Source of the DNA: Guillardia theta CCMP2712
Lineage: Eukaryota > Protista > Cryptophyta
Direction of reading: 5' to 3'
Assembly: GCF_000315625.1 (NCBI RefSeq)
Contig: NW_005434660.1
Location: 974,365 to 1,021,266 of the forward strand
Length of the DNA: 46,902 nt
A program made the position numbers and the translations under genes. The notes beneath the pieces are model-generated. The model did no database searches. It worked only from the letters and a program-made list of their open reading frames with translations, and was not told the origin of the DNA. The first letter of the stretch is position 1; each line of letters starts with the position of its first letter. Positions 35,064 to 44,803 of this stretch are shown here, piece after piece.

Positions 35064-37470
35064 ATGATGGCTGAGAGGGAGAGGGGCGGAGAACATGCGA
35101 GAAGAGAAGAAGGAGGAGCAGGATTACCAGAGGAAGCAGCTATGCATTACCCAAGGTCAGAGGAGAAGAAGATGAGATTGTCCATGAAGGGAATGAGGGA
35201 ATGGCGTCGTGAAGGAAGATAAACAAGGAGTACCTGGAAATGTTCGATAGCGTCGAGGAGGACAGACATTCTGTATTAGGGTGAAAGTTGGCCGTTCAGC
35301 ACTAAAATCAAAGTTATTTCCTGGGAAAGGAAATGTTGAGCAAGACTTGAAGTCAGCTGTATCCCAAGGGAGACGCTGTAGGTCTTCTAACGTAGGTACG
35401 TAGGACGAAGGTGAGTTGCGAAGAAGCAACTCCGCATGGACAAGGAGGTCGAGTTTGTCGAGCAAGGAGGCGATCGTCAACGATTACTCAACGCTGCATC
35501 CTCACCTATGGCCTTCGGCTATGAGGTATCGGAGGACGGGAGGCCATTGAGGGTTTAGGGTTCACTGTGTTACTGTGCTGTGCTCAGGAAGTCGCTTCTT
35601 CGCTCTTGCATCCTGCAGAGCTGCCCCAGACCCACAACGAGCTCTCTGACGGCAGCGTCCGTGCGTCAATGGCTCATTACAACGTGTCCGGACAGCTCGG
35701 AAGCCCGTCAGAGCATTTTCACATGCAGAACGCAAGCAGCGTGTATCGGAGGTCGATGAATGAGAACTTCAACATCCAAGAGAAAGAAATCGATAGACTC
35801 GAGAAGATCGGAGAAGGTTGTGACCCTTGAGCCGCTCTTCCTCATTGATCTCATGGCTCTTCCTCATTGATCTCATGGCAGGGGTAGTTGGAAACATCTA
35901 CAGGGGAAGATGGAGGATGCTTGACGTGGCCATCAAGGAGCTCAAAGTCGACTATGAGAAGGGCAGCATTGCGCATAGCGACCTGCTGAAGGTGGACCAG
36001 CAAATCATCGTCAGCTCTCTCACATTCATGCGCAGGATTTCTCCATGTGGTCACGAGTTCGTCATCCCAACATCTGCATGTTCCTCGGGTTGCCCTCCCC
36101 CTCTTCGCCCAAATTCCTCACCCCCTGTGCTCCTCGTGCCCAGGATCGTGATAAGTAGTGAAGTCCCCGCGATTGTTTGCGAGATGATGGAAGGGGGAAG
36201 CATGGAAACTTTCTTTGTGCAGAACAGGAAGAGGTACGGACGAGATTGGAGGCCAAGCAGTCGCAAGGTTTATGAGTGGTCGCTTTGCTTGAACAGGGTA
36301 CATGAGAATTCCCTGCTCCTGTTCTCCTCCTCTCCATGCTCATCCTGCTCCTCCTGTTTCATTTGCCCGCTGATCTTGACATATTGCTCACAGGCCTTAT
36401 GCTACTTGCATGAATCGTCTCCTCCCATTGTTCATCGAGACATAAAACCTGCGAACCTTCTGCTGTCTGCTGATCACTCGTTCCTCAAGGTCTGCGTCGA
36501 AAGGCCATTCCCTCGCTGACCCTCTTCACAGTTGACTGACTTTGGGTTGGCGCGGGTCAGACCGGGAGGAACGTACAACATGTCGGGGAAGACAGGAACG
36601 AAAAGGTGTGGGAGAGGAGGGGAGAGGGGAGCCTGACGTGGTGGTAGGTATATGGCGCCAGAAGTGGTGCGTTGCGAGGGAGACTATGGAACGCCTGTGG
36701 ACATTTATTCAGCAGGTGAGAGAGTCAAAAGCAAAGGAGGTAGAGGTTGGAAGGGTGGGTGGGTCAGACAGGAGCAAGAGGGAGCAATGAGCAGGGTCGA
36801 AGATTCCAAAGGATCAAGACAAGATGCGGGAAGAGCTTACTTGTATCAGGCATGATCATGTGGCAAATGTGTGCGGGTCAGAGACCGTTGGAGCACATCT
36901 CAGCAGACGCCGTGGCATGTCGAGCGTCCGACCCTCAGGTACCGCGAGAGAGGAAAGAAGCGAAGATCAGGGAGGGAGGGAGGGAGGGAGGGAGGAGGCA
37001 GAATGATGCTGCTCAGGTAGATGGCAAGCAAGACACTAAATCACGTGTTGTAGGAGAACCTGCGGCCGAGCATGGATCGGGTCAGATGGAAGGATATGCA
37101 GTCTCTCATAGTTATGGTGAGGTGGAGGAGAGCCGAGCTGCGTGCTGAGCTTGTGGCTCAAGATGTGGAACGGCCAGCCCATGGAGCGACCGACAGCTCG
37201 AGAAGTTCTGACGATCCTTGAGCGAATGCGAGGGCGTCCTGGCCGAATGAGAAGGGTGAGGGAGGATAGCAGAGGGAGGGAGGGAGGGAGGGAGGGAGGG
37301 AGGGGGAGAAAATGGAAGAGCGCAGCACGAGGGGAGGGAGAAGAGAGTAGAAGTGTAACAGGGATTGGAAACTGACAGGGAGGGAGCCCAGAGGGGGAGA
37401 GGAGGGGGGGGGGGAGGAAGATGACGTCAGAGCTGCAGGTGGGATGCTCGTGCGGACTCTTTGAAGTGAT
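35064..37470 (+). CDS. Tyrosine-kinase-like (TKL/Raf-like) protein kinase, about 12 exons
   Basis: IGEG|VVGNIYRGRW, VAIKEL, RHPNICMFLG, HRDIKPANLLL, LTDFGLAR, TGTK|RYMAPEV, VDIYSA|GMIMW and MWNGQPMERPTAREVL across GT-AG introns. Confidence 0.92.
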
Positions 37471-37550: not shown

Positions 37551-40500
37551 TCATGTTCGCGTCTGCTCTTCGAGTCTCCAGTGGTGTAGGTTTGCCTTGA
37601 GCCGCTCTAGAATCACTTCAGAGGCGGGGAAGCAGCTCACCCACGCGACCGCCAGCGGGTTCACGACGAGCTCGAAGAATCCAATCTGCGACTTAGTCAC
37701 CCCTGGCTTGTTTCTGTCCATCAGGTAGGAGACAGGCAGCCCCAGTGATCTCTCTACATCCCCCTGCCGGAAGAGCTCGTCCTCCAGTCTCTGCGACCAC
37801 TGCACGTGCACGTCCAGCTCAGCGTAGGCGTGGCCGAGGTCGCACATTTTGATCGCTCCTCGCAGCATCAGCACTAGGCTCTGCTCGTCCACCTCCGGCG
37901 GCCCGTTGGCTTCCTTGCTCGTCTCCTGCCCCGGTCCGTTGAGAGAGGGCGCGAGCTCCGGCGTGGATCGCTTCTGCACGCGATGCAGCAGCTCAGTGCG
38001 GATGAGGGATACCATCCTCTGGTGCTCTCCCATGTCGGTCGCGAGGACCATGTCGATGATGAGCTTGCGGATCTTCGACTGCGAGAGCTGCGGCACGCTG
38101 TGCATGAAGTTGCAGTCCGGGCGCTTCATGATTCGGAAGGCAGCAGCGAGGTGATGGTTCTCGTTGGGTGCCTTGTCGTTATGTAGGAGAGCTCGCTCGT
38201 GCCCCATCTTGACGAGAATGTCGTTGTTCAGCCCCAGGTGCTCGAAGTCGTGGATGATCGCCGCGAGCAGGGCCGCGAGAATGTCCGTTGGCCCCATGAA
38301 TTCCCCGATTCCCCCTCTCGATATGAACATGTGCATCTTCTGCGTCACGTCCGCGCAGTGGATCGCGTTGTGGTAGGGGTTCGACTTGGGCATTCCGCTC
38401 TCAATCTCCTGCAGGAACTTGACCAGCCGCGCCGAGTCCAGCGCGAAGTTGTCGACACACCCGTGGGTCTTGAGAAGGAAGAGGGCCAGCACTTGAACAG
38501 GTTTGCCTCCCGTCACCTCATTCAGCTTAAACGGATTGAAGTTCCAGTCATGAATAGTCTGCAAGCATTCACTGACTTCGCTGCTGTTCATAAGCTCTGC
38601 TATTCCCCGCTCAAGGAATGAAAGATGGTCTGACATCTTGTGCGACAGTTTCGTGTCTCCAAAGCTGTTTAGCAACTGAGGAGGAGGAAGTAGCGTTGCA
38701 TGTACACTGCTTGCCTCATTCATCGCCACGTCATGCGCGTCCTGCTGCAATTCTTCCCCCGTGCGCGACTCCTCCCCCGATGGACGATCGTCGCCCTGCT
38801 CCTCAATCTTCGTCTCGAGATCCTCAAAGTTTTCGGTCTTCTGAACGCCCAGCAAGCCAGCCACATCGTCGTCAAAGAGGCCAAGCAAACCAGCAGGCGA
38901 GTCAAAGTTGAAAGGAGTCTCTGGGGACTGCCGCCCTGTAGTTGAATAGATCTCATGCTCTGCGTTCTTCATTTCAACATCATCATCGTTAACATTCACA
39001 TCCAAGTTGAGCGCCTCGTAGAGATTCTCTGTGTCCTTGGCGATGATTTGAAGCAGGTCTCTCGCCAATGCGACATGAAACTGATCATCCCCGTCCCGAA
39101 TGCCATCCAATGAACATTTTACGTGATTCATGGCCAAAATCATCGACGGCTCTATGAAGTGTTCTGCTTTGCGGAGCTCAGCATAATGCATTTCGAATCT
39201 CATCCAATCGAGAGAACACAAAAGGTACAAGAAGAAGAATTTTCTGGAGCTGCATAGTGCACAACACTTTTGAAGATCATCCCTTACTTCCTTGACCCAG
39301 TTGTCACGCGATTCAACTTCTTCGAACAGGTCGATCTTGTCAGACGCTGTCATGATCTTGGAGGCACAGAGGAGACGAAGATATTCAGACTGAAGGTAAC
39401 TTCCAAGTCGGAGAACGTCTGGCAGGCATGCCGTTATCCTCGACTTGACCAGCTCCCAGTCTCCTCGAACAGCAATACATTGTAAACTGAGAATCGGATC
39501 GATCTTTTGCGTATGAGGTCCAACGTTACTTCCGAACGCTCCATGCCCCCCCTCCCCATCCCGCGACTCCGCCGACGCAGATTCAGAGTCGAGCAGAGAG
39601 CCGAAGTCGGACATGTCCTCGTCCAGGTCAAGGTTCTCGCGCTCCGACAAGATGTTCCCCTCGTGAAGCATCGAGAAATGCGCATTGATCCGCGGGTTGC
39701 AGGCCCATCGCTTCGCACGGTTGGCCAGCGACGTGCAGTGACCGAGGTCGTACTGATGCGCGATGTTCAAGGCGCGCAACGCAAACTCCTCGCATTTTCC
39801 CACTTCTCCTGTGAGCGGGAAATATTCGTTCGCTAGTGTACACAACACGACACAGAGAGTAGGAGGATGCGCCGCTTCCTCTGCCATTCTAACAACTTCC
39901 TCCAGCTTTCCACGCGCATTTTGTAGATCCCCCACGACAACAAGGGCAGGTGCCCATGACGACAGAGCAACGATGGTTTGTATGACTCCGTTGATGGCGG
40001 CGAGCTCCGAACCTGAAGCAAGATAGTCATCATAGATCTGCTTGAGACTGTCCATGTAGTGAAACAAGTTGTCAAAGTCTCCAGTGAAATAGAGAGCTGG
40101 GATTAGAGACGCCATTCCCAGCTCTTCATGCAGCCGATTTGATGTTCTCTTTCCTGACTTATAAATTCTCTTAGCAATCTTTGCGCCAACATCATAAAGC
40201 TGACGGCCGTACAAGTTCACACAAATCCCAGCTAGAGCAGGAACAGCAAGGTCGTCCAGATCTTCTGACTGTGGAATCAGTCTATGCAGACCATGATACG
40301 CTGCTATAGACTCGGGACTGCCATGGCCGTAGACAAGTAGTGTATGCGGAGCCATCTCTGCCAGCAGCATTAGCTTGCGATCTGCGATGTCTTTCTGCAA
40401 CGGAACCCTGTCAAGTATCCTGCATGCTCGTTGCAGCAATTCGATGGCAGGCAAGTACGAACATTCTGCCATTGCAGCATGCGCTGCCAAGTGTAGGTAG

Positions 40501-43500
40501 TTAGCAGCTCGATGAACGTCCTCAACTCCAACTTGGCTGTGATCAGCGGCATGCGACCAATGGTGAGCCAAGATCAAATGTGACGATCGCTCATCAAGAT
40601 CTAGCGAGCCTTCGTAATACTCGGCCACAAAATGGTGCCAAATTCTCTGGTAGCTTTTGAGCAAACTCTGATTTACACTTTCAACAAGTCCAGGGATTAC
40701 AACCTTATAAACATCGTACATTCCTGTTTTCGGATTCTTCTGATTAACGTATGCAGCAAAACTATTGTTTGAAAAGCTATCATTTGCAAGAGCTCCCTTG
40801 TATTGAAGAAGCTGAGCATGGACCTGTGATTGTATCGTGGGCGTTTGCCACTGCCAGTTGGCACACTCGTGGCAAGTGCTCGACTCTGTGCTCAACATTT
40901 GCTTCATATCTTCAATTCGTGCAGGTTGCAGCATTCCCAGGTTAATCAGCTGCTGAATGCTAGGTTCAAAATCAGGCGCAAAGTTTGGAAAAGTACTGCT
41001 GTACACATGACGAGCAAGATTAATTGTGAAGAGCGCATTATGTGAAAGAAAGCAAACAACTTTGACGAGCATCTGAACATGCACCAACAACCGATCGCCA
41101 AATTCTCCTCGGCCCAAAGCTTGCATTCTTGTCAAACCATTGTCCAAACCGGAAAGATCATTGCGAGAGACAATGGCGCCATCGCGTGTTCGAAAGATGT
41201 GCCCGTTGTCCACAAGATTTGCACAGACATTCTTTACGAAGCTCGGAGAGCATTCTCCTTTCTGTATCAATTGAACAAAGTAGGATTCAAGGGGAGGCGG
41301 AATATGCTGTACATTGTACGTCTGTCGCAGCAAATCGATGACCTTCCGCTTGAGAAAATGATACGAATAATTGTGTCTTGTATTGAATACTTCAAGCGGG
41401 GTGTCTCTTCCTTTCACTTTTACCGCAGGCATTTGTTCAAACTCAATCATAAGGCTCGATGCATCATGTGTCTCCTTATCAACGAGAATTACGTTTTCTC
41501 CCGCTTTGCACATGAGACGAGCAGCCATGTTGCACACACTCCCCATCGCACACATCTCTCGTCTTGTACTACTCCCAACAAACCCCGAGTAAGCTGTTCC
41601 TGTAGTGATGCCAATGCTTAACTTGATTGACAAATCCTGTACCCATTTCCGCATCTCAAGTCCTGCCAAGACGGCTCGCACAGGATCATTCTCGTGAGGC
41701 GAAAATGGGGGCATTCCCATAACACATATTGCTAATAGCCCCTTGTCATCCTGTAAAAACTGGCGCAAAGTTCCCTTTCGGCGATATGTTGCAACTTGAA
41801 TGGCAAGGAGAGCTCGATGGGTTTGCAGAACAGTGTCATAGTCGGGAGCTTCAAGGTCAAGATGCAGTCTGACAAACATGACGGTCATCTTTCGCAAATC
41901 AGCGGCAAAGGGAGCAATGTCCTGCAAGTCTCTTGCTCCTTCGTGACAGTACATTTTCAGAATCGGCCAAGCAGTGTAAGTGAGATTTTCAGGGATGCTG
42001 ATTCCCGGAGGATTTACGCTTTCGGAGGGTTCAGTGTAGCCCATGATTTTGAAGTTTCCTGCCATCGTTTCCTCCGCTTGAAACTCAGATTCAATGTGCG
42101 TCCAAGCCACCTTGCTCACTACGAGAGTACCGATTGCTGCCTCCTCCAGAGCATCTGCAGCCTCGAGCAAAGCCTTTCCAATAACGAGAAATTCTTTCCG
42201 AGCGCCGTTGTGCTTGTCAAGTTGTGCTCCACCAACGTGAGCAAACCACATCGGTCCACAGCTTAGAGATTGATGGAGACGCAATGTCACTCCTGCAGTG
42301 TACCGTTTACCACCACTGTATGCTTTCTTCATGTCCGCAAGCTCCTGGGCGATTTCAGGTTTTTGAGAGAGAAGAGGTACGAGCGCTGCATAGCTGAGAT
42401 GGATCATGACACAATTGCTTCCAGCAACGACAGTTGCTGTCCGTTTTGATGCGTGAGTAGCGCCATCTCACCTACGATTTCCCCTTCTTCCAGCGTTGCG
42501 ATTTCTTCACCGTGATCAATACTTTCTTCAATACTGCATTTCATGGACTGATCTGCGCTTTCGGATTCTTTTTTGACAAATATATTCACCATACCAGAAT
42601 GAACGATCAGCATGGAGTCAGCTGGAGATCCCTGCTTGATGATGACATCGCCAGCACTGAAACGCTGCAACTTGCACTGCTCTGCCAACATGGCCAGCTC
42701 CGTGCTGGTCAGAACCTGCGCATGAGTTCAGTAAGTGAATCGAAAGTCTTCGACAAACTCTTCAAGCAAACAAAGGAGATTCGCAACCAACCTTGAGCCA
42801 AGCGATGGCTCGCAGCCTCCTTCGAATTTCTAAACCCTCTAATTGAACAGCTGAAGCCAACCACCCATTCTCATCTCCCATTTCTTGTTTGTCTGCATCC
42901 ACAAGAGCAGCAGTGGCAAAGTGACGGGCAAGCTGATCTGCGAATTCAAGTGTGTTGGCGTCCGGCACGTGAACCTGCCAAATATAATCAGAAACGAGTA
43001 GTTTAAATCACTTCGATTAACCTTGAAGGTGCCGTGCAGTCTTTCAAGCTCCATAGCACACGTGACGGCTTGTTGAATGGTCTATACAAGAACAAACATT
43101 AGATGTCGCCCTGTGGGGAACTTGCATACCTTTGCTAAGGTGTTCTGGTCACACTCCCAGATCACGATGACAGCATCCCCAGCGAATTTTACGATATCTC
43201 CTGCCCAAGCCTCGACGTGCTTGATAATAGTGCTGAACATTCGATTGATCGTTGAAGTGAGAGAATCTATGCCTTCTTGCCCAAGCCCCTGGAATCTGTC
43301 CGACAATCTGGTAAAACCCTGCACATGCGCTAACTCAACCTGCAGTTTCGCAGAATTTACAAGCAGAAAATCTTACGGAGATGTCGACAATTAGGACCAC
43401 TGCCAACCTCAGCTCAGCATCTATGGGCTGATACAAACATGTCAGGTTGCTTCGAAACAAACATGGTAAATGTTACAAATTGATTTGTTGTGGCAATGCT

Positions 43501-43859
43501 CCAGTGACGAAGGACGTCTTTTGTGACTTGCTGCTCATTTCATGTTCAGACGTGCTTCATTCAAGGTCACTTGAGGAAAACCTGGTCTTGGTGCGATGTG
43601 TGCTGTTGTTGGACTGCCTTTGCGATTGCAACTCTTGGCAAGAAACACTGGAAATACCTGTTCATAGTCGATGAGCAATCAATCGTTGACGACTCGAACA
43701 GTCTTACTCATATTTGCGTTGGTTGACCAGGCTGACTGCCGCACGCCACTTCTTCCCTTTGAGAGCAAGAGGCTTCGTTTTCTCATTTAAGGATGGTCTA
43801 CGGCCGATACCATTCTCACCCTGTTGCTCTTCGCCCGACTTACGGAGCACCTTCAGCAT
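37551..43859 (-). CDS. Soluble-type (ADCY10/sAC-like) class III nucleotidyl cyclase with an inserted cNMP-binding domain, helical/TPR-like region and C-terminal class I phosphodiesterase; frameshift at ~42445
   Basis: C1: VLIVDIS|GFTRL..GDIVKFAGDAVIVIW (43390-43155). CNB domain: FSAGDVIIKQGSPADSMLIVHSGMV..GEIVGEMALL..RTATV (42715-42400). C2: LRKMTVMFVRL..QFLQDDKG..SIGITTG..GFVGSSTRREMCAMGSVCNMAARLM. PDE: YHNAIHCADV, HDFEHLGLNN, ENHHL, LATDM, IKMCDLGH, FRQGD, KSQIGF. Start codon tentative. Confidence 0.92.
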
Positions 43860-44803
43860 CTTTTCCGTTTGTGTGGTTCCACCACAACTGAACGGATGTT
43901 CGTAAAACCAATGACCGACCGCGATATACTGACAAGCGTTCAGACCATCGATCCCTTGTCGAGATTTCCACACAATCTATCAATATGCAAGAGCTTATCT
44001 CGTCCAGGCAAGATGAATCAAGAGCAATGCAAGAGACTGAACAGATTCACAGATCTTCTCCCATCTTATACGCTGAGAGCAGGAGGCCGAGGGCTGACAG
44101 CCGCTAAAAAGTATTGCTTGTCATCAGCAGCGACTGTCCATAAAATTCTCGGTCCTGAGCCCAATGTCAAAGAAAAGTTCGACATTACCCTTGCTAGTAA
44201 AGTATCGTTCAGGAGCACGCTCATTGCTACCTTGATTAGACCATGTAAAATCTAACGTCTCGATCATGTACCGAGATCTCTTCTGATTTTAAACAAGAAT
44301 ATTCTTCTCGACTCTTTGCTTCCTCTGCCTCTTCTTGCCCGATTCGAGTGACTAAAAATCGCCTTCCTCCTTCCTCGCACCTCATGCATATTGATCAACA
44401 CTACCCCTCAGACTCAATACCCCACCCCTACCTCCTTCGTTCAACCCCACCCACCATTTCCTATCTTGAAACCCACTCTTTGATCATTTCAGGAACGTCT
44501 CTGCCGGGAACCCTCCACATGATTACACTACCCCTACCTTTCCCCCCAATCCATTATAAACTGAGCCGGTACAAGGAATTCAGTACCCCACCAATAACTC
44601 TCTCGGAAGCGGGCAGGTTTGGGGCGGGGGTTGGGGCGCCAGCCATGAGACTACCCTTCTTTTTCACATCTCTACCACCCACCTCCATGAGATTGATGGG
44701 GTAGAAATCAGGGGGGCAGAGAAAGAGATCGCGAGGGGGTACAGGGGTAGAGAAAGAGATCAGGGGTATAGAGAAAATATTCATGAAGGGATCGATAGTG
44801 TAG

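What the first reader, a model, noticed from the sequence alone, without database searches (positions are those of the whole stretch)
37551..43859. One polypeptide that could make, sense and degrade a cyclic nucleotide (cyclase + CNB domain + PDE)
Seen: tandem sAC-type cyclase domains with both metal-binding Asp residues in C1 (VDIS, AGDA) and the catalytic NxxxR in C2 (NMAAR), a cNMP-binding domain, about 900 aa of helical region, and a class I PDE with intact metal-binding His/Asp motifs and the invariant Gln (KSQIGF). C2 and the PDE lie in one uninterrupted 1618-codon frame, so the fusion is not a gene-prediction artefact. Known: plant CAPE fuses an N-terminal PDE to a single C-terminal cyclase, and ADCY10-type enzymes have neither a PDE nor a CNB domain. 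Inference: a self-contained feedback module, such as a pulse generator or local cNMP microdomain, in an architecture I do not recognise as characterised.
Basis: partly seen in the sequence, partly recalled or inferred. Interest (0 to 1): 0.9.

Follow-up and report, generated by a model that had tools for sequence, protein, structure and literature searches.

The report
Cyclase, cNMP sensor and phosphodiesterase fused
A single expressed gene of the alga Guillardia theta encodes a 1976-residue protein that joins a soluble-type cyclic-nucleotide cyclase, a cyclic-nucleotide-binding domain inserted inside that cyclase, and a cyclic-nucleotide phosphodiesterase; I found no description of this combination in the literature, and the public annotation hides it by splitting the gene.

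Summary
The window is Guillardia theta CCMP2712. On the minus strand, 43859 to 37551, lies one 8-exon gene. Intron-free cDNA-type contigs from two studies confirm all seven GT..AG introns. One 7.5-kb contig runs from upstream of the start codon to at least 37950 inside the PDE domain, and on for 1,662 unmapped letters.

All three runs with contigs, including a DNA run, carry one extra base after 42443. With it, the CNB exon reads in frame into the 1618-codon ORF and restores a canonical phosphate-binding cassette. The protein is 1976 aa.

Domain order: C1a, CNB insertion of about 200 aa, C1b, C2, winged-helix-like units plus TPR-like solenoid without a P-loop, disordered linker, class I PDE. 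All catalytic residues checked are present. The public model (EKX50674.1, 327 aa) covers only the PDE.

The same architecture occurs in Hanusia phi (92% identity) and in two unnamed lineages (52% and 42%). Guillardia and Hanusia also have a PDE-less paralog.

The feedback function is inference. One lineage has a degenerate cassette, and G. theta has at least 96 other CNB matches, so "self-contained" is doubtful. The closest known system, plant CAPE, is an independent fusion in the opposite order. Verdict: new variant of a known kind, interest about 0.6.

The parts
37551..43859 (-). Whole coding region: 8 exons, 1976 codons plus stop, after adding the one base missing from the assembly.
   Evidence: Spliced and translated from the joints. 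Exons: 43708-43859, 43582-43657, 43477-43530, 43377-43427, 43130-43318, 43022-43081, 42792-42974, 37551-42715.
42972..43418 (-). C1a, the first half of cyclase domain C1 (aa 98-195, spread over 4 exons). It holds both metal-binding Asp residues (VDIS D109, AGDA D159) and the Lys of VKFAGDA.
   Evidence: Ortholog P0002 aligns to human ADCY10 residues 41-132. Motif positions. Conserved in all complete orthologs.
42294..42971 (-). Insertion of about 200 aa inside C1 (aa 196-396, one intron at 42716-42791). It carries the CNB domain.
   Evidence: sAC-like relatives without the insertion align to aa 95-195 and then aa 400-700 with no gap on their side. In the AF2 model the CNB beta-barrel lies between alpha3 and beta4.
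42408..42691 (-). CNB domain core (aa 264-358). Phosphate-binding cassette at aa 337-353, reading GEMALLTHQKRTATVVA.
   Evidence: Pfam PF00027 E 4e-13 on the truncated frame and E 4.5e-17 over profile positions 2-88 of 89 in the 92%-identical Hanusia protein. The two halves of the cassette lie in two frames of the window and are joined by the extra base.
42443..42444 (.). One-base deletion in the window assembly. Reads have T on the plus strand (a fifth A in an A-run on the minus strand) between these positions.
   Evidence: table 4: the insertion is present in every contig covering the site in X1, X2 and the DNA run X12.
42027..42293 (-). C1b, the second half of C1 (aa 397-485; beta4, beta5, alpha4 and following).
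   Evidence: BLAST to sAC-like STAND cyclases P0007 and P0009. AF2 strands 327-346 and 360-365 of the ortholog model. Foldseek match to the human sAC core.
41382..41909 (-). C2 cyclase domain (aa 525-700): K580, C644, N651, R655.
   Evidence: Pfam PF00211. Alignment to ADCY10 residues 278-452 places K on K334, C on T405, and N/R on N412/R416. These residues are invariant in all family members.
40698..41375 (-). Two small winged-helix-like alpha/beta units (aa 703-928). No Walker A motif.
   Evidence: AF2 model with pLDDT mostly 75-89. Regular-expression search found no P-loop. Pfam finds no AAA_16.
39027..40688 (-). TPR-like alpha-solenoid (aa 932-1485).
   Evidence: AF2 shows helix pairs with pLDDT 80-94. 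Weak Foldseek matches to APC5, APPBP2, Rap and MalT domain III. Weak Pfam TPR_MalT hit. BLAST of aa 940-1027 to the post-NTPase region of sAC-like STAND proteins.
38634..39026 (-). Acidic linker predicted as disordered (aa 1486-1616). The PDE-less paralog ends at a position that aligns inside this stretch.
   Evidence: pLDDT 24-30. Poorly conserved among orthologs. The paralog's stop comes just after its LLDLLNDNIFD motif.
37602..38375 (-). Class I PDE catalytic domain (aa 1703-1960): H1704, H1708, H1744, D1745, H1748, D1816, D1881, Q1932.
   Evidence: Pfam PF00233 E 4e-66 over profile positions 1-237 of 238. Matches to PDE1B and PDE4B/D structures at E about 1e-48, with the motifs aligned. 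Conservation in orthologs.

Best explanation
Shown:
- This is one expressed Guillardia theta gene for a 1976-aa soluble protein.
- A sAC/ADCY10-type tandem cyclase (C1 plus C2) carries a CNB domain spliced into the alpha3-beta4 loop of C1.
- It is followed by winged-helix-like units, a TPR-like solenoid (a STAND-type arm that has lost its P-loop NTPase), a disordered linker and a complete class I PDE.
- All catalytic and ligand-contact residues checked are present.
- The architecture is conserved across lineages that are 42-52% identical.

Inferred:
- The protein is a bifunctional enzyme that both makes and degrades a cyclic nucleotide. I judge cAMP most likely (about 60%), because the substrate-selecting Lys is present and the PDE is closest to the PDE1/PDE4/PDE7/PDE8 types.
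- The inserted CNB domain makes the cyclase sensitive to cyclic nucleotide. Both ends of the CNB domain are anchored in the catalytic fold. From my own knowledge, the pseudo-symmetric alpha3-beta4 loop on C2 helps form the Gs-alpha groove in mammalian membrane cyclases, and the C1 site is the presumed Gi-alpha site. Ligand-driven movement of the CNB helices should therefore change the C1-C2 geometry. The sign of the effect is unknown.
- The tethered PDE removes product next to its source. This would keep signals brief and local, feeding the many other CNB proteins of the cell.
For: One gene and one transcript:
- Run X1 holds a 7,500-nt contig with seven GT..AG introns removed, spanning 37950-43949 and beyond. 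X2, from another study, shows six of the seven joints in the pieces listed, all seven in the joint table. DNA run X12 keeps the introns.
- The frame is continuous after the read-supported one-base correction.

Domains:
- Pfam matches.
- The ortholog's C1 and C2 match human ADCY10 at E 7e-25.
- The AF2 model of the ortholog's N-terminal module superposes on human sAC cores at TM 0.70-0.74 (target-normalised), with the CNB domain as an excursion.
- The PDE matches PDE1B and PDE4 structures at E about 1e-48.

Conservation of architecture and residues:
- Hanusia phi P0001.
- P0002, on 6.2-kb transcript contigs in 12 runs.
- P0195, a single 1951-codon ORF on a eukaryotic metagenome contig.
- L006, where two adjacent gene calls together rebuild the same protein.

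The insertion is real: relatives lacking it align on both sides of it, and in L006 aa 21-1089 lie in one exon.

Precedent: CAPE is a characterised bifunctional cyclase/PDE (abstracts; PMC5159850, PMC11032487).
Against: - No activity has been measured.
- The second substrate-specifying position of C2 is Cys. Human sAC has Thr there. From my own knowledge, membrane adenylyl cyclases have Asp and guanylyl cyclases have Cys. With the cassette's RTA triplet (as in PKG and CNG/HCN channels, also from my own knowledge), this leaves cGMP or mixed specificity open.
- The P0195/L006 lineage lacks the Glu and Arg of the cassette, so ligand sensing is not essential to the family.
- A PDE-less paralog exists, so the cyclase part can work alone.
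- A short-read contig cannot exclude extra isoforms that start or end between C2 and the PDE.
- In the one raw-read RNA run only 6 reads were laid, so that run neither supports nor tests the transcript.
Confidence: 0.6

Rival explanations
1. Cross-talk integrator rather than self-feedback. The cyclase makes one nucleotide (for example cAMP), while the CNB domain senses the other (for example cGMP), the PDE hydrolyses the other, or both. The protein would then couple two pathways.
For: The C2 specificity pair is mixed: Lys plus Cys, invariant in the family. The cassette has the RTA triplet, also seen in cGMP-preferring sensors (my own knowledge). The best PDE structure match, PDE1B, is dual-specific, and the cGMP-specific PDE9 is not far behind.
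Against: No positive evidence for different specificities. Most of the top-ranked solved PDE relatives are cAMP-specific (PDE4, 7, 8). Lys at the first position is the adenine-selecting residue in sAC.
Confidence: 0.2
2. One catalytic domain is a pseudo-enzyme. For example, the PDE domain only binds cNMP as a regulator, or the cyclase is an inactive scaffold. The protein would then have a single activity.
For: Dead enzymatic domains are common in multi-domain signalling proteins (general knowledge). The STAND NTPase has already been lost from this family.
Against: Every catalytic residue checked is kept in both domains in G. theta, Hanusia and P0002, and in the parts available for the third lineage, at 42-52% overall identity. 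The Pfam PDE match is full length.
Confidence: 0.1
3. The locus mainly yields separate proteins, cyclase-CNB and PDE, through an internal promoter, internal polyadenylation or proteolysis in the disordered linker.
For: The paralog ends within the stretch that aligns to the linker. The linker is about 130 aa and predicted as disordered. The public annotation has a PDE-only model. Short-read contigs cannot prove a single molecule.
Against: The contig is unbroken, with one mean depth figure over its whole length, which cannot show local changes in coverage. There is no stop codon for 1721 codons. In P0002 the whole ORF sits on 6.2-kb transcript contigs with short UTRs in 12 runs. The PDE-only public model is explained by the assembly frameshift.
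Confidence: 0.07
4. Assembly or annotation artefact: two neighbouring genes wrongly joined.
For: The assembly does contain an error at 42443.
Against: That error splits the gene rather than fusing it. DNA contigs of X12 are collinear wherever they cover the stretch, which leaves gaps of about 460 nt near 39471-39929 and about 290 nt near 42525-42813. The same order is found in independent genomes and transcriptomes.
Confidence: 0.01

Closest known systems
CAPE (COMBINED AC with PDE) of Marchantia and other streptophytes with motile sperm; CAPE-like proteins of oomycetes (PMC5159850, PMC8115329, PMC11032487)
   Same: A class III cyclase and a class I PDE sit in one polypeptide. CAPE is described as a dual-functioning enzyme, and its authors propose local control of cAMP.
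   Different: CAPE has the PDE at the N-terminus, then further regions, then a cyclase domain at the C-terminus (abstracts; text quoted). The abstracts and passages read mention no CNB domain. Here the cyclase is N-terminal and of the tandem sAC type, a CNB domain is inserted in it, a TPR-like arm follows, and the PDE is C-terminal. A liverwort protein with PDE and cyclase domains, which I take for a CAPE (P0008), matches only through its PDE at 31% identity. The fusion is therefore independent.
Mammalian soluble adenylyl cyclase ADCY10 and the sAC-like STAND cyclases of cyanobacteria and chytrids
   Same: Tandem C1-C2 pseudo-heterodimer. Metal-binding Asp residues on C1; Lys and Asn/Arg on C2. 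Best sequence and fold match. A TPR-type C-terminal arm.
   Different: Differences in this protein: a CNB insertion in C1; no P-loop NTPase (AAA_16); a PDE at the end; Cys where sAC has Thr405. Bicarbonate regulation was not assessed.
GGDEF-EAL proteins of bacteria (c-di-GMP synthase and phosphodiesterase in one chain)
   Same: Same logic: opposing make and break activities for one second messenger in a single protein, often with a product-binding allosteric site. This rests on my own knowledge.
   Different: Unrelated folds, a different messenger, and prokaryotic.
Sensor-coupled PDEs: GAF-regulated PDE2/5/6/10/11, rhodopsin-PDE, H-NOX-PDE
   Same: A class I PDE placed C-terminal to a sensory module. 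Rh-PDE is listed. H-NOX-PDE proteins are among the nearest PDE relatives.
   Different: None of these carries a cyclase. Here the sensor is embedded in the cyclase, not next to the PDE.

Membership tests
Class III nucleotidyl cyclase, sAC/ADCY10 type | Two cyclase homology domains in one chain that form a pseudo-heterodimer | tested here: met
   Two matched stretches to ADCY10 (C1 41-132, C2 278-452), E 7e-25. AF2 model against sAC structures, TM 0.70-0.74 target-normalised.
Class III nucleotidyl cyclase, sAC/ADCY10 type | Two metal-binding Asp on C1; Asn and Arg (NxxxR) and the substrate Lys on C2 | tested here: met
   D109, D159, K580, N651 and R655 align to sAC D47, D99, K334, N412 and R416.
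Class III nucleotidyl cyclase, sAC/ADCY10 type | Second specificity residue Thr (sAC) or Asp (membrane AC) | tested here: not met
   Cys644 aligns with sAC T405 and is invariant in the family. The nucleotide made cannot be called from sequence.
Class III nucleotidyl cyclase, sAC/ADCY10 type | C-terminal STAND module: P-loop NTPase (AAA_16) followed by TPR | tested here: not met
   No Walker A motif and no AAA_16 hit. Only winged-helix-like units and a TPR-like solenoid remain. Relatives do carry PF13191.
Cyclic nucleotide-binding domain (PF00027) | Pfam score above the gathering cut-off; beta-barrel followed by helices | tested here: met
   49.5 bits on the truncated frame. 62.2 bits over profile positions 2-88 of 89 in Hanusia. 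Barrel plus helices in the AF2 model.
Cyclic nucleotide-binding domain (PF00027) | Phosphate-binding cassette with Gly-Glu and Arg-Thr/Ala | tested here: met
   The cassette reads GEMALLTHQKRTATVVA after the read-supported base insertion. It is degenerate in the P0195/L006 lineage. Ligand binding itself is not testable here.
Class I cyclic nucleotide phosphodiesterase (PF00233) | Full-length catalytic domain with HNxxH, HDxxH, two further Asp and the invariant Gln | tested here: met
   223.5 bits over profile positions 1-237 of 238. Motifs align to PDE1B. Motif positions.
CAPE | N-terminal PDE, then further regions, then a cyclase domain at the C-terminus | tested here: not met
   The order is reversed, the cyclase is tandem, and the only similarity to the liverwort protein P0008, which I take for a CAPE, is the PDE domain. 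CAPE architecture taken from the abstracts and the text.
CAPE | Both cyclase and PDE activities demonstrated | not testable with these tools
   Needs recombinant protein assays.

The most novel reading that the evidence does not exclude
The CNB domain inserted at the alpha3-beta4 allosteric loop makes the cyclase directly gated by its own product. With the tethered PDE, a single polypeptide would then behave as an autonomous pulse generator, adaptation unit or oscillator for a cyclic nucleotide. That would be a natural one-protein feedback circuit, and a template for engineered ones.
Probability: 0.3. Interest if true: 0.8.

Novelty: new variant of a known kind. Interest (0 to 1): 0.6.

Why it matters
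Bifunctional cyclase/PDE enzymes are so far represented by plant CAPE. This is a second, independent fusion. It is built on the soluble-cyclase scaffold and adds a ligand sensor inside the catalytic domain, at a loop that G proteins use to regulate mammalian cyclases.

If both activities and product gating are confirmed, it would give a compact natural system for studying how synthesis, sensing and degradation shape local cyclic-nucleotide signals. It would also be a case study in allosteric control by domain insertion.

The result also corrects the G. theta reference, which has a one-base error and a gene model truncated to the PDE. That explains why the architecture is absent from the annotated proteome.

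Tried and rejected
- Intron between the CNB exon and the long ORF. I first looked for a splice donor after GEIV or GEMALL. Rejected: the cDNA-type contigs have no joint there and instead carry one extra base.
- Raw RNA reads of X17. Only 6 reads were laid, which is too few to say anything about transcript ends.
- P-loop search in the middle region: nothing found.
- Foldseek on the middle region gave only generic TPR-type matches at weak E-values. It gave no specific function.
- ESM Atlas feature search with P0002: best score 0.81, and no large cluster with this architecture.
- Representative search with the helical region plus PDE. Apart from fragments of this family, the hits listed match through the PDE domain only. 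Of 13 scanned with Pfam, cyclase and CNB domains appeared only in P0043, a fragment of this family; the four longest unrelated ones scanned had none.
- Literature. Six full-text searches found CAPE, Rh-PDE and reviews, but nothing on a sAC-CNB-PDE protein or on G. theta cyclases.
- The careful ML tree did not finish. Only the quick tree is reported.
- Not attempted: naming the organisms behind P0002 (runs SRR152746xx) and the metagenome contigs, and assessing the bicarbonate-site residues.
Full report
**What is there**

The window belongs to Guillardia theta CCMP2712. Its assembly has 87.1 Mb in 669 contigs. A 327-aa protein identical to the C-terminal end of the gene is EKX50674.1 / XP_005837654.1, GUITHDRAFT_66867.

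On the minus strand a 1618-codon ORF runs from 42407 to 37551. Pfam finds in it a full class I PDE (PF00233, E 4e-66, aa 1345-1602) and a cyclase domain (PF00211, E 2.6e-8). The short ORF just upstream matches the cNMP-binding family (PF00027, E 4e-13).

**Transcript evidence and gene model**

I laid four public runs on 37950-43949.
- Run X1 holds one 7,500-nt contig that covers the whole stretch, runs past both ends and lacks seven short segments of 47-76 nt.
- Each missing segment is bounded by CT..AC on the plus strand, which is GT..AG on the minus strand.
- Run X2, from another study, shows six of the seven joints in the pieces listed; the joint table credits it with all seven.
- The contigs of run X12 carry none of the joints. 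I therefore take X12 as DNA and X1/X2 as cDNA.
- All three runs place one extra T after 42443 on the plus strand. The reference assembly has therefore lost one A from an A-run on the coding strand.

With the introns removed and that base added, the transcript has a single ORF of 1976 codons from the ATG at 43859 to the stop at 37551. The frameshift had split the phosphate-binding cassette of the CNB domain. Its first half (GEMALLTHQ) lies in the upstream frame and its second half (KRTATVVA) in the frame of the long ORF. This error also explains why the public annotation keeps only a 327-aa PDE fragment.

**Anatomy**

Positions refer to the corrected protein.

| Residues | Element | Evidence |
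|---|---|---|
| 98-195 | C1a, first half of cyclase domain C1, with both metal-binding Asp (D109 in VDIS, D159 in AGDA) | |
| 196-396 | Insertion carrying a complete CNB domain, cassette at 337-353 | |
| 397-485 | C1b, second half of C1 | |
| about 525-700 | C2, with K580, C644, N651, R655 | |
| 703-928 | Two small winged-helix-like units | |
| 932-1485 | TPR-like solenoid | |
| 1486-1616 | Linker predicted as disordered | |
| 1703-1960 | PDE, with H1704, H1708, H1744, D1745, H1748, D1816, D1881, Q1932 | |

Three observations show that the CNB domain is truly inside C1.
- sAC-like cyclases without it (P0007, P0009, P0013) align to aa 95-195 and then directly to aa 400-700.
- In an environmental relative, aa 21-1089 are encoded in one exon.
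- An AF2 model of the ortholog P0002 (residues 50-720, mean pLDDT 70, catalytic parts 80-93) puts the CNB barrel between helix alpha3 and strand beta4. The model still superposes on human sAC catalytic cores at target-normalised TM 0.70-0.74.

By sequence, the best solved relative of the cyclase is human ADCY10, at E 7e-25 with both domains matched. The best solved relatives of the PDE are PDE1B and PDE4B/D, at E about 1e-48, with the metal-binding and glutamine motifs aligned.

The middle region has no Walker A motif and no AAA_16 match. Its relatives do carry that NTPase. Its solenoid gives only weak TPR-type fold matches, MalT domain III among them.

**Relatives**

Full-length proteins with PF00211, PF00027 and PF00233 are:
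- Hanusia phi P0001, 92% identical.
- P0002, 52% identical.
- P0195 and P0003, 42% identical.

P0002 sits as an unbroken 1954-codon ORF on 6.2-kb transcript contigs in 12 runs, with about 220 nt of 5' UTR and about 150 nt of 3' UTR.

P0195 is a single 1951-codon ORF on a metagenome contig, next to eukaryotic genes of the Mon2/Sec7-like kind.

On another metagenome scaffold (L006), the gene caller produced two adjacent genes 112 nt apart. One (P0043) has the cyclase and CNB domains. The other (P0022) has the helical region and PDE. tblastn with the G. theta protein shows that together they rebuild the same protein with introns. This copy is 92% identical to P0195, so it belongs to the same lineage.

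That makes three divergent lineages. Only Guillardia and Hanusia, both cryptophytes, are named.

All cyclase and PDE catalytic residues are conserved wherever sequence is available. The CNB cassette is canonical in Guillardia, Hanusia, P0002, P0004 and the paralogs. It lacks Glu and Arg in P0195/L006.

G. theta has one paralog at G000:C5:658-662 kb with C1a-CNB-C1b-C2 and the helical region. It ends at a stop codon at a position aligning inside the linker, and a convergent glycine-transporter-family gene follows directly. Hanusia P0005 is its ortholog at 90% identity.

A quick ML tree (the careful search did not finish) makes the CNB-inserted family monophyletic. It places the PDE-less paralogs next to the Guillardia/Hanusia PDE-bearing copy, with the PDE-bearing P0002 and P0195 outside. 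This suggests, tentatively, that the PDE is ancestral to the family and was lost in the paralog.

Beyond the family, identity drops to about 30%, to cyanobacterial and chytrid sAC-like STAND cyclases without CNB or PDE.

Among 120 long proteins with the most similar PDE domains, only P0001 and P0002 also carry a cyclase. The next PDE relatives are green-algal PDEs, then animal PDE1 and PDE4.

**How it probably works**

Shown: one gene, a continuous cDNA-type contig, intact catalytic and ligand-contact motifs, and conservation across lineages.

Inferred:
- The protein both synthesises and hydrolyses a cyclic nucleotide, as CAPE does in plants (abstracts).
- The CNB domain is tied by both of its ends into the C1 alpha3-beta4 loop. 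From my own knowledge of membrane adenylyl cyclases, the equivalent loop of C2 helps form the Gs-alpha groove, and that of C1 is the presumed Gi-alpha site. A ligand-driven rearrangement of the CNB N- and C-terminal helices should therefore shift the C1-C2 geometry and change activity.
- I cannot tell whether this would be activation or inhibition.
- The PDE hangs on a flexible linker of about 130 aa and would remove product near its source.

Which nucleotide is involved is open.
- Lys580 matches the adenine-selecting Lys of sAC.
- The second position is Cys, as in guanylyl cyclases (my own knowledge; alignment).
- The cassette has the RTA triplet.
- The nearest solved PDEs are dual-specific or cAMP-specific.

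I lean towards cAMP, at about 60%.

The module is unlikely to be self-contained. The genome has at least 96 further CNB-domain matches.

**Comparison with known systems**

CAPE is the characterised cyclase/PDE fusion. Oomycetes have CAPE-like proteins with the same organisation (PMC8115329). CAPE has the opposite domain order, and the abstracts and passages I read mention no CNB domain. The liverwort protein found here that I take for a CAPE, P0008, resembles this protein only through the PDE domain.

This protein works like CAPE in principle but is not a member of that family. It belongs to the sAC-type cyclase lineage by fold and catalytic residues. It departs from that lineage in four tested features: the CNB insertion, loss of the P-loop NTPase, Cys at the second specificity position, and the PDE.

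Six full-text searches found no description of this architecture. The library does not cover most subscription journals, so this is not proof of absence.

**Caveats**

- A contig assembled from short reads does not prove a single mRNA molecule.
- The left 1.66 kb of the X1 contig (beyond 37950) probably merges with the transcript of a convergent protein-kinase gene at 35567-37375.
- The raw-read RNA run gave only 6 reads.
- The AF2 models rest on shallow alignments of 6-8 sequences.

**Verdict**

The protein is a new variant of a known kind, the bifunctional cyclase/PDE. Interest is about 0.6.

Noticed in passing
window 42443-42444: The reference assembly lacks one base in an A-run on the minus strand. 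Three runs, including a DNA run, carry it. The resulting frameshift probably explains why the public G. theta gene model (EKX50674.1, 327 aa) covers only the PDE.
   Followed up: yes
window 35567-37375 (+): A convergent multi-exon protein-kinase gene (Pkinase match, HRDIKPANLLL motif). Its last ORF ends about 180 nt from the stop codon of the cyclase-PDE gene. The 7.5-kb X1 contig probably merges the overlapping 3' ends of both transcripts.
   Followed up: partly
G000:C5:658085-661963 (L005:2583-6482): A PDE-less paralog (CNB inside C1, then C2 and the helical region). It ends at a stop at a position aligning inside the linker and is followed by a convergent glycine-transporter-family gene. 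Its ortholog is Hanusia phi A0A7S0I376.
   Followed up: yes
G000:C8:674108-674401: A fragment 67% identical to the start of C2 (ORF aa 137-234), with four stop codons inside. It may be a pseudogene piece of this family.
   Followed up: no
P0006 (MMETSP1392) and P0212 (Chlamydomonas eustigma): H-NOX plus HNOBA domains fused to a class I PDE are among the closest relatives of this PDE domain. A haem/NO sensor coupled to a PDE rather than to a guanylyl cyclase is unusual in itself.
   Followed up: no
G000:C107:9753-12287: At least six CNB-domain matches in tandem, most in one 843-aa open frame. The genome as a whole gives at least 96 CNB matches and 27 PDE matches, which indicates a very large cyclic-nucleotide signalling repertoire.
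   Followed up: no
L006:8079-17475 and L009:6001-11856: In the environmental lineage the CNB cassette has lost Glu and Arg, while the cyclase motifs and all PDE motifs in the sequence available are kept. The 3' part of the PDE in L006 is split by introns of about 1-2.4 kb, unlike the short introns of G. theta.
   Followed up: partly
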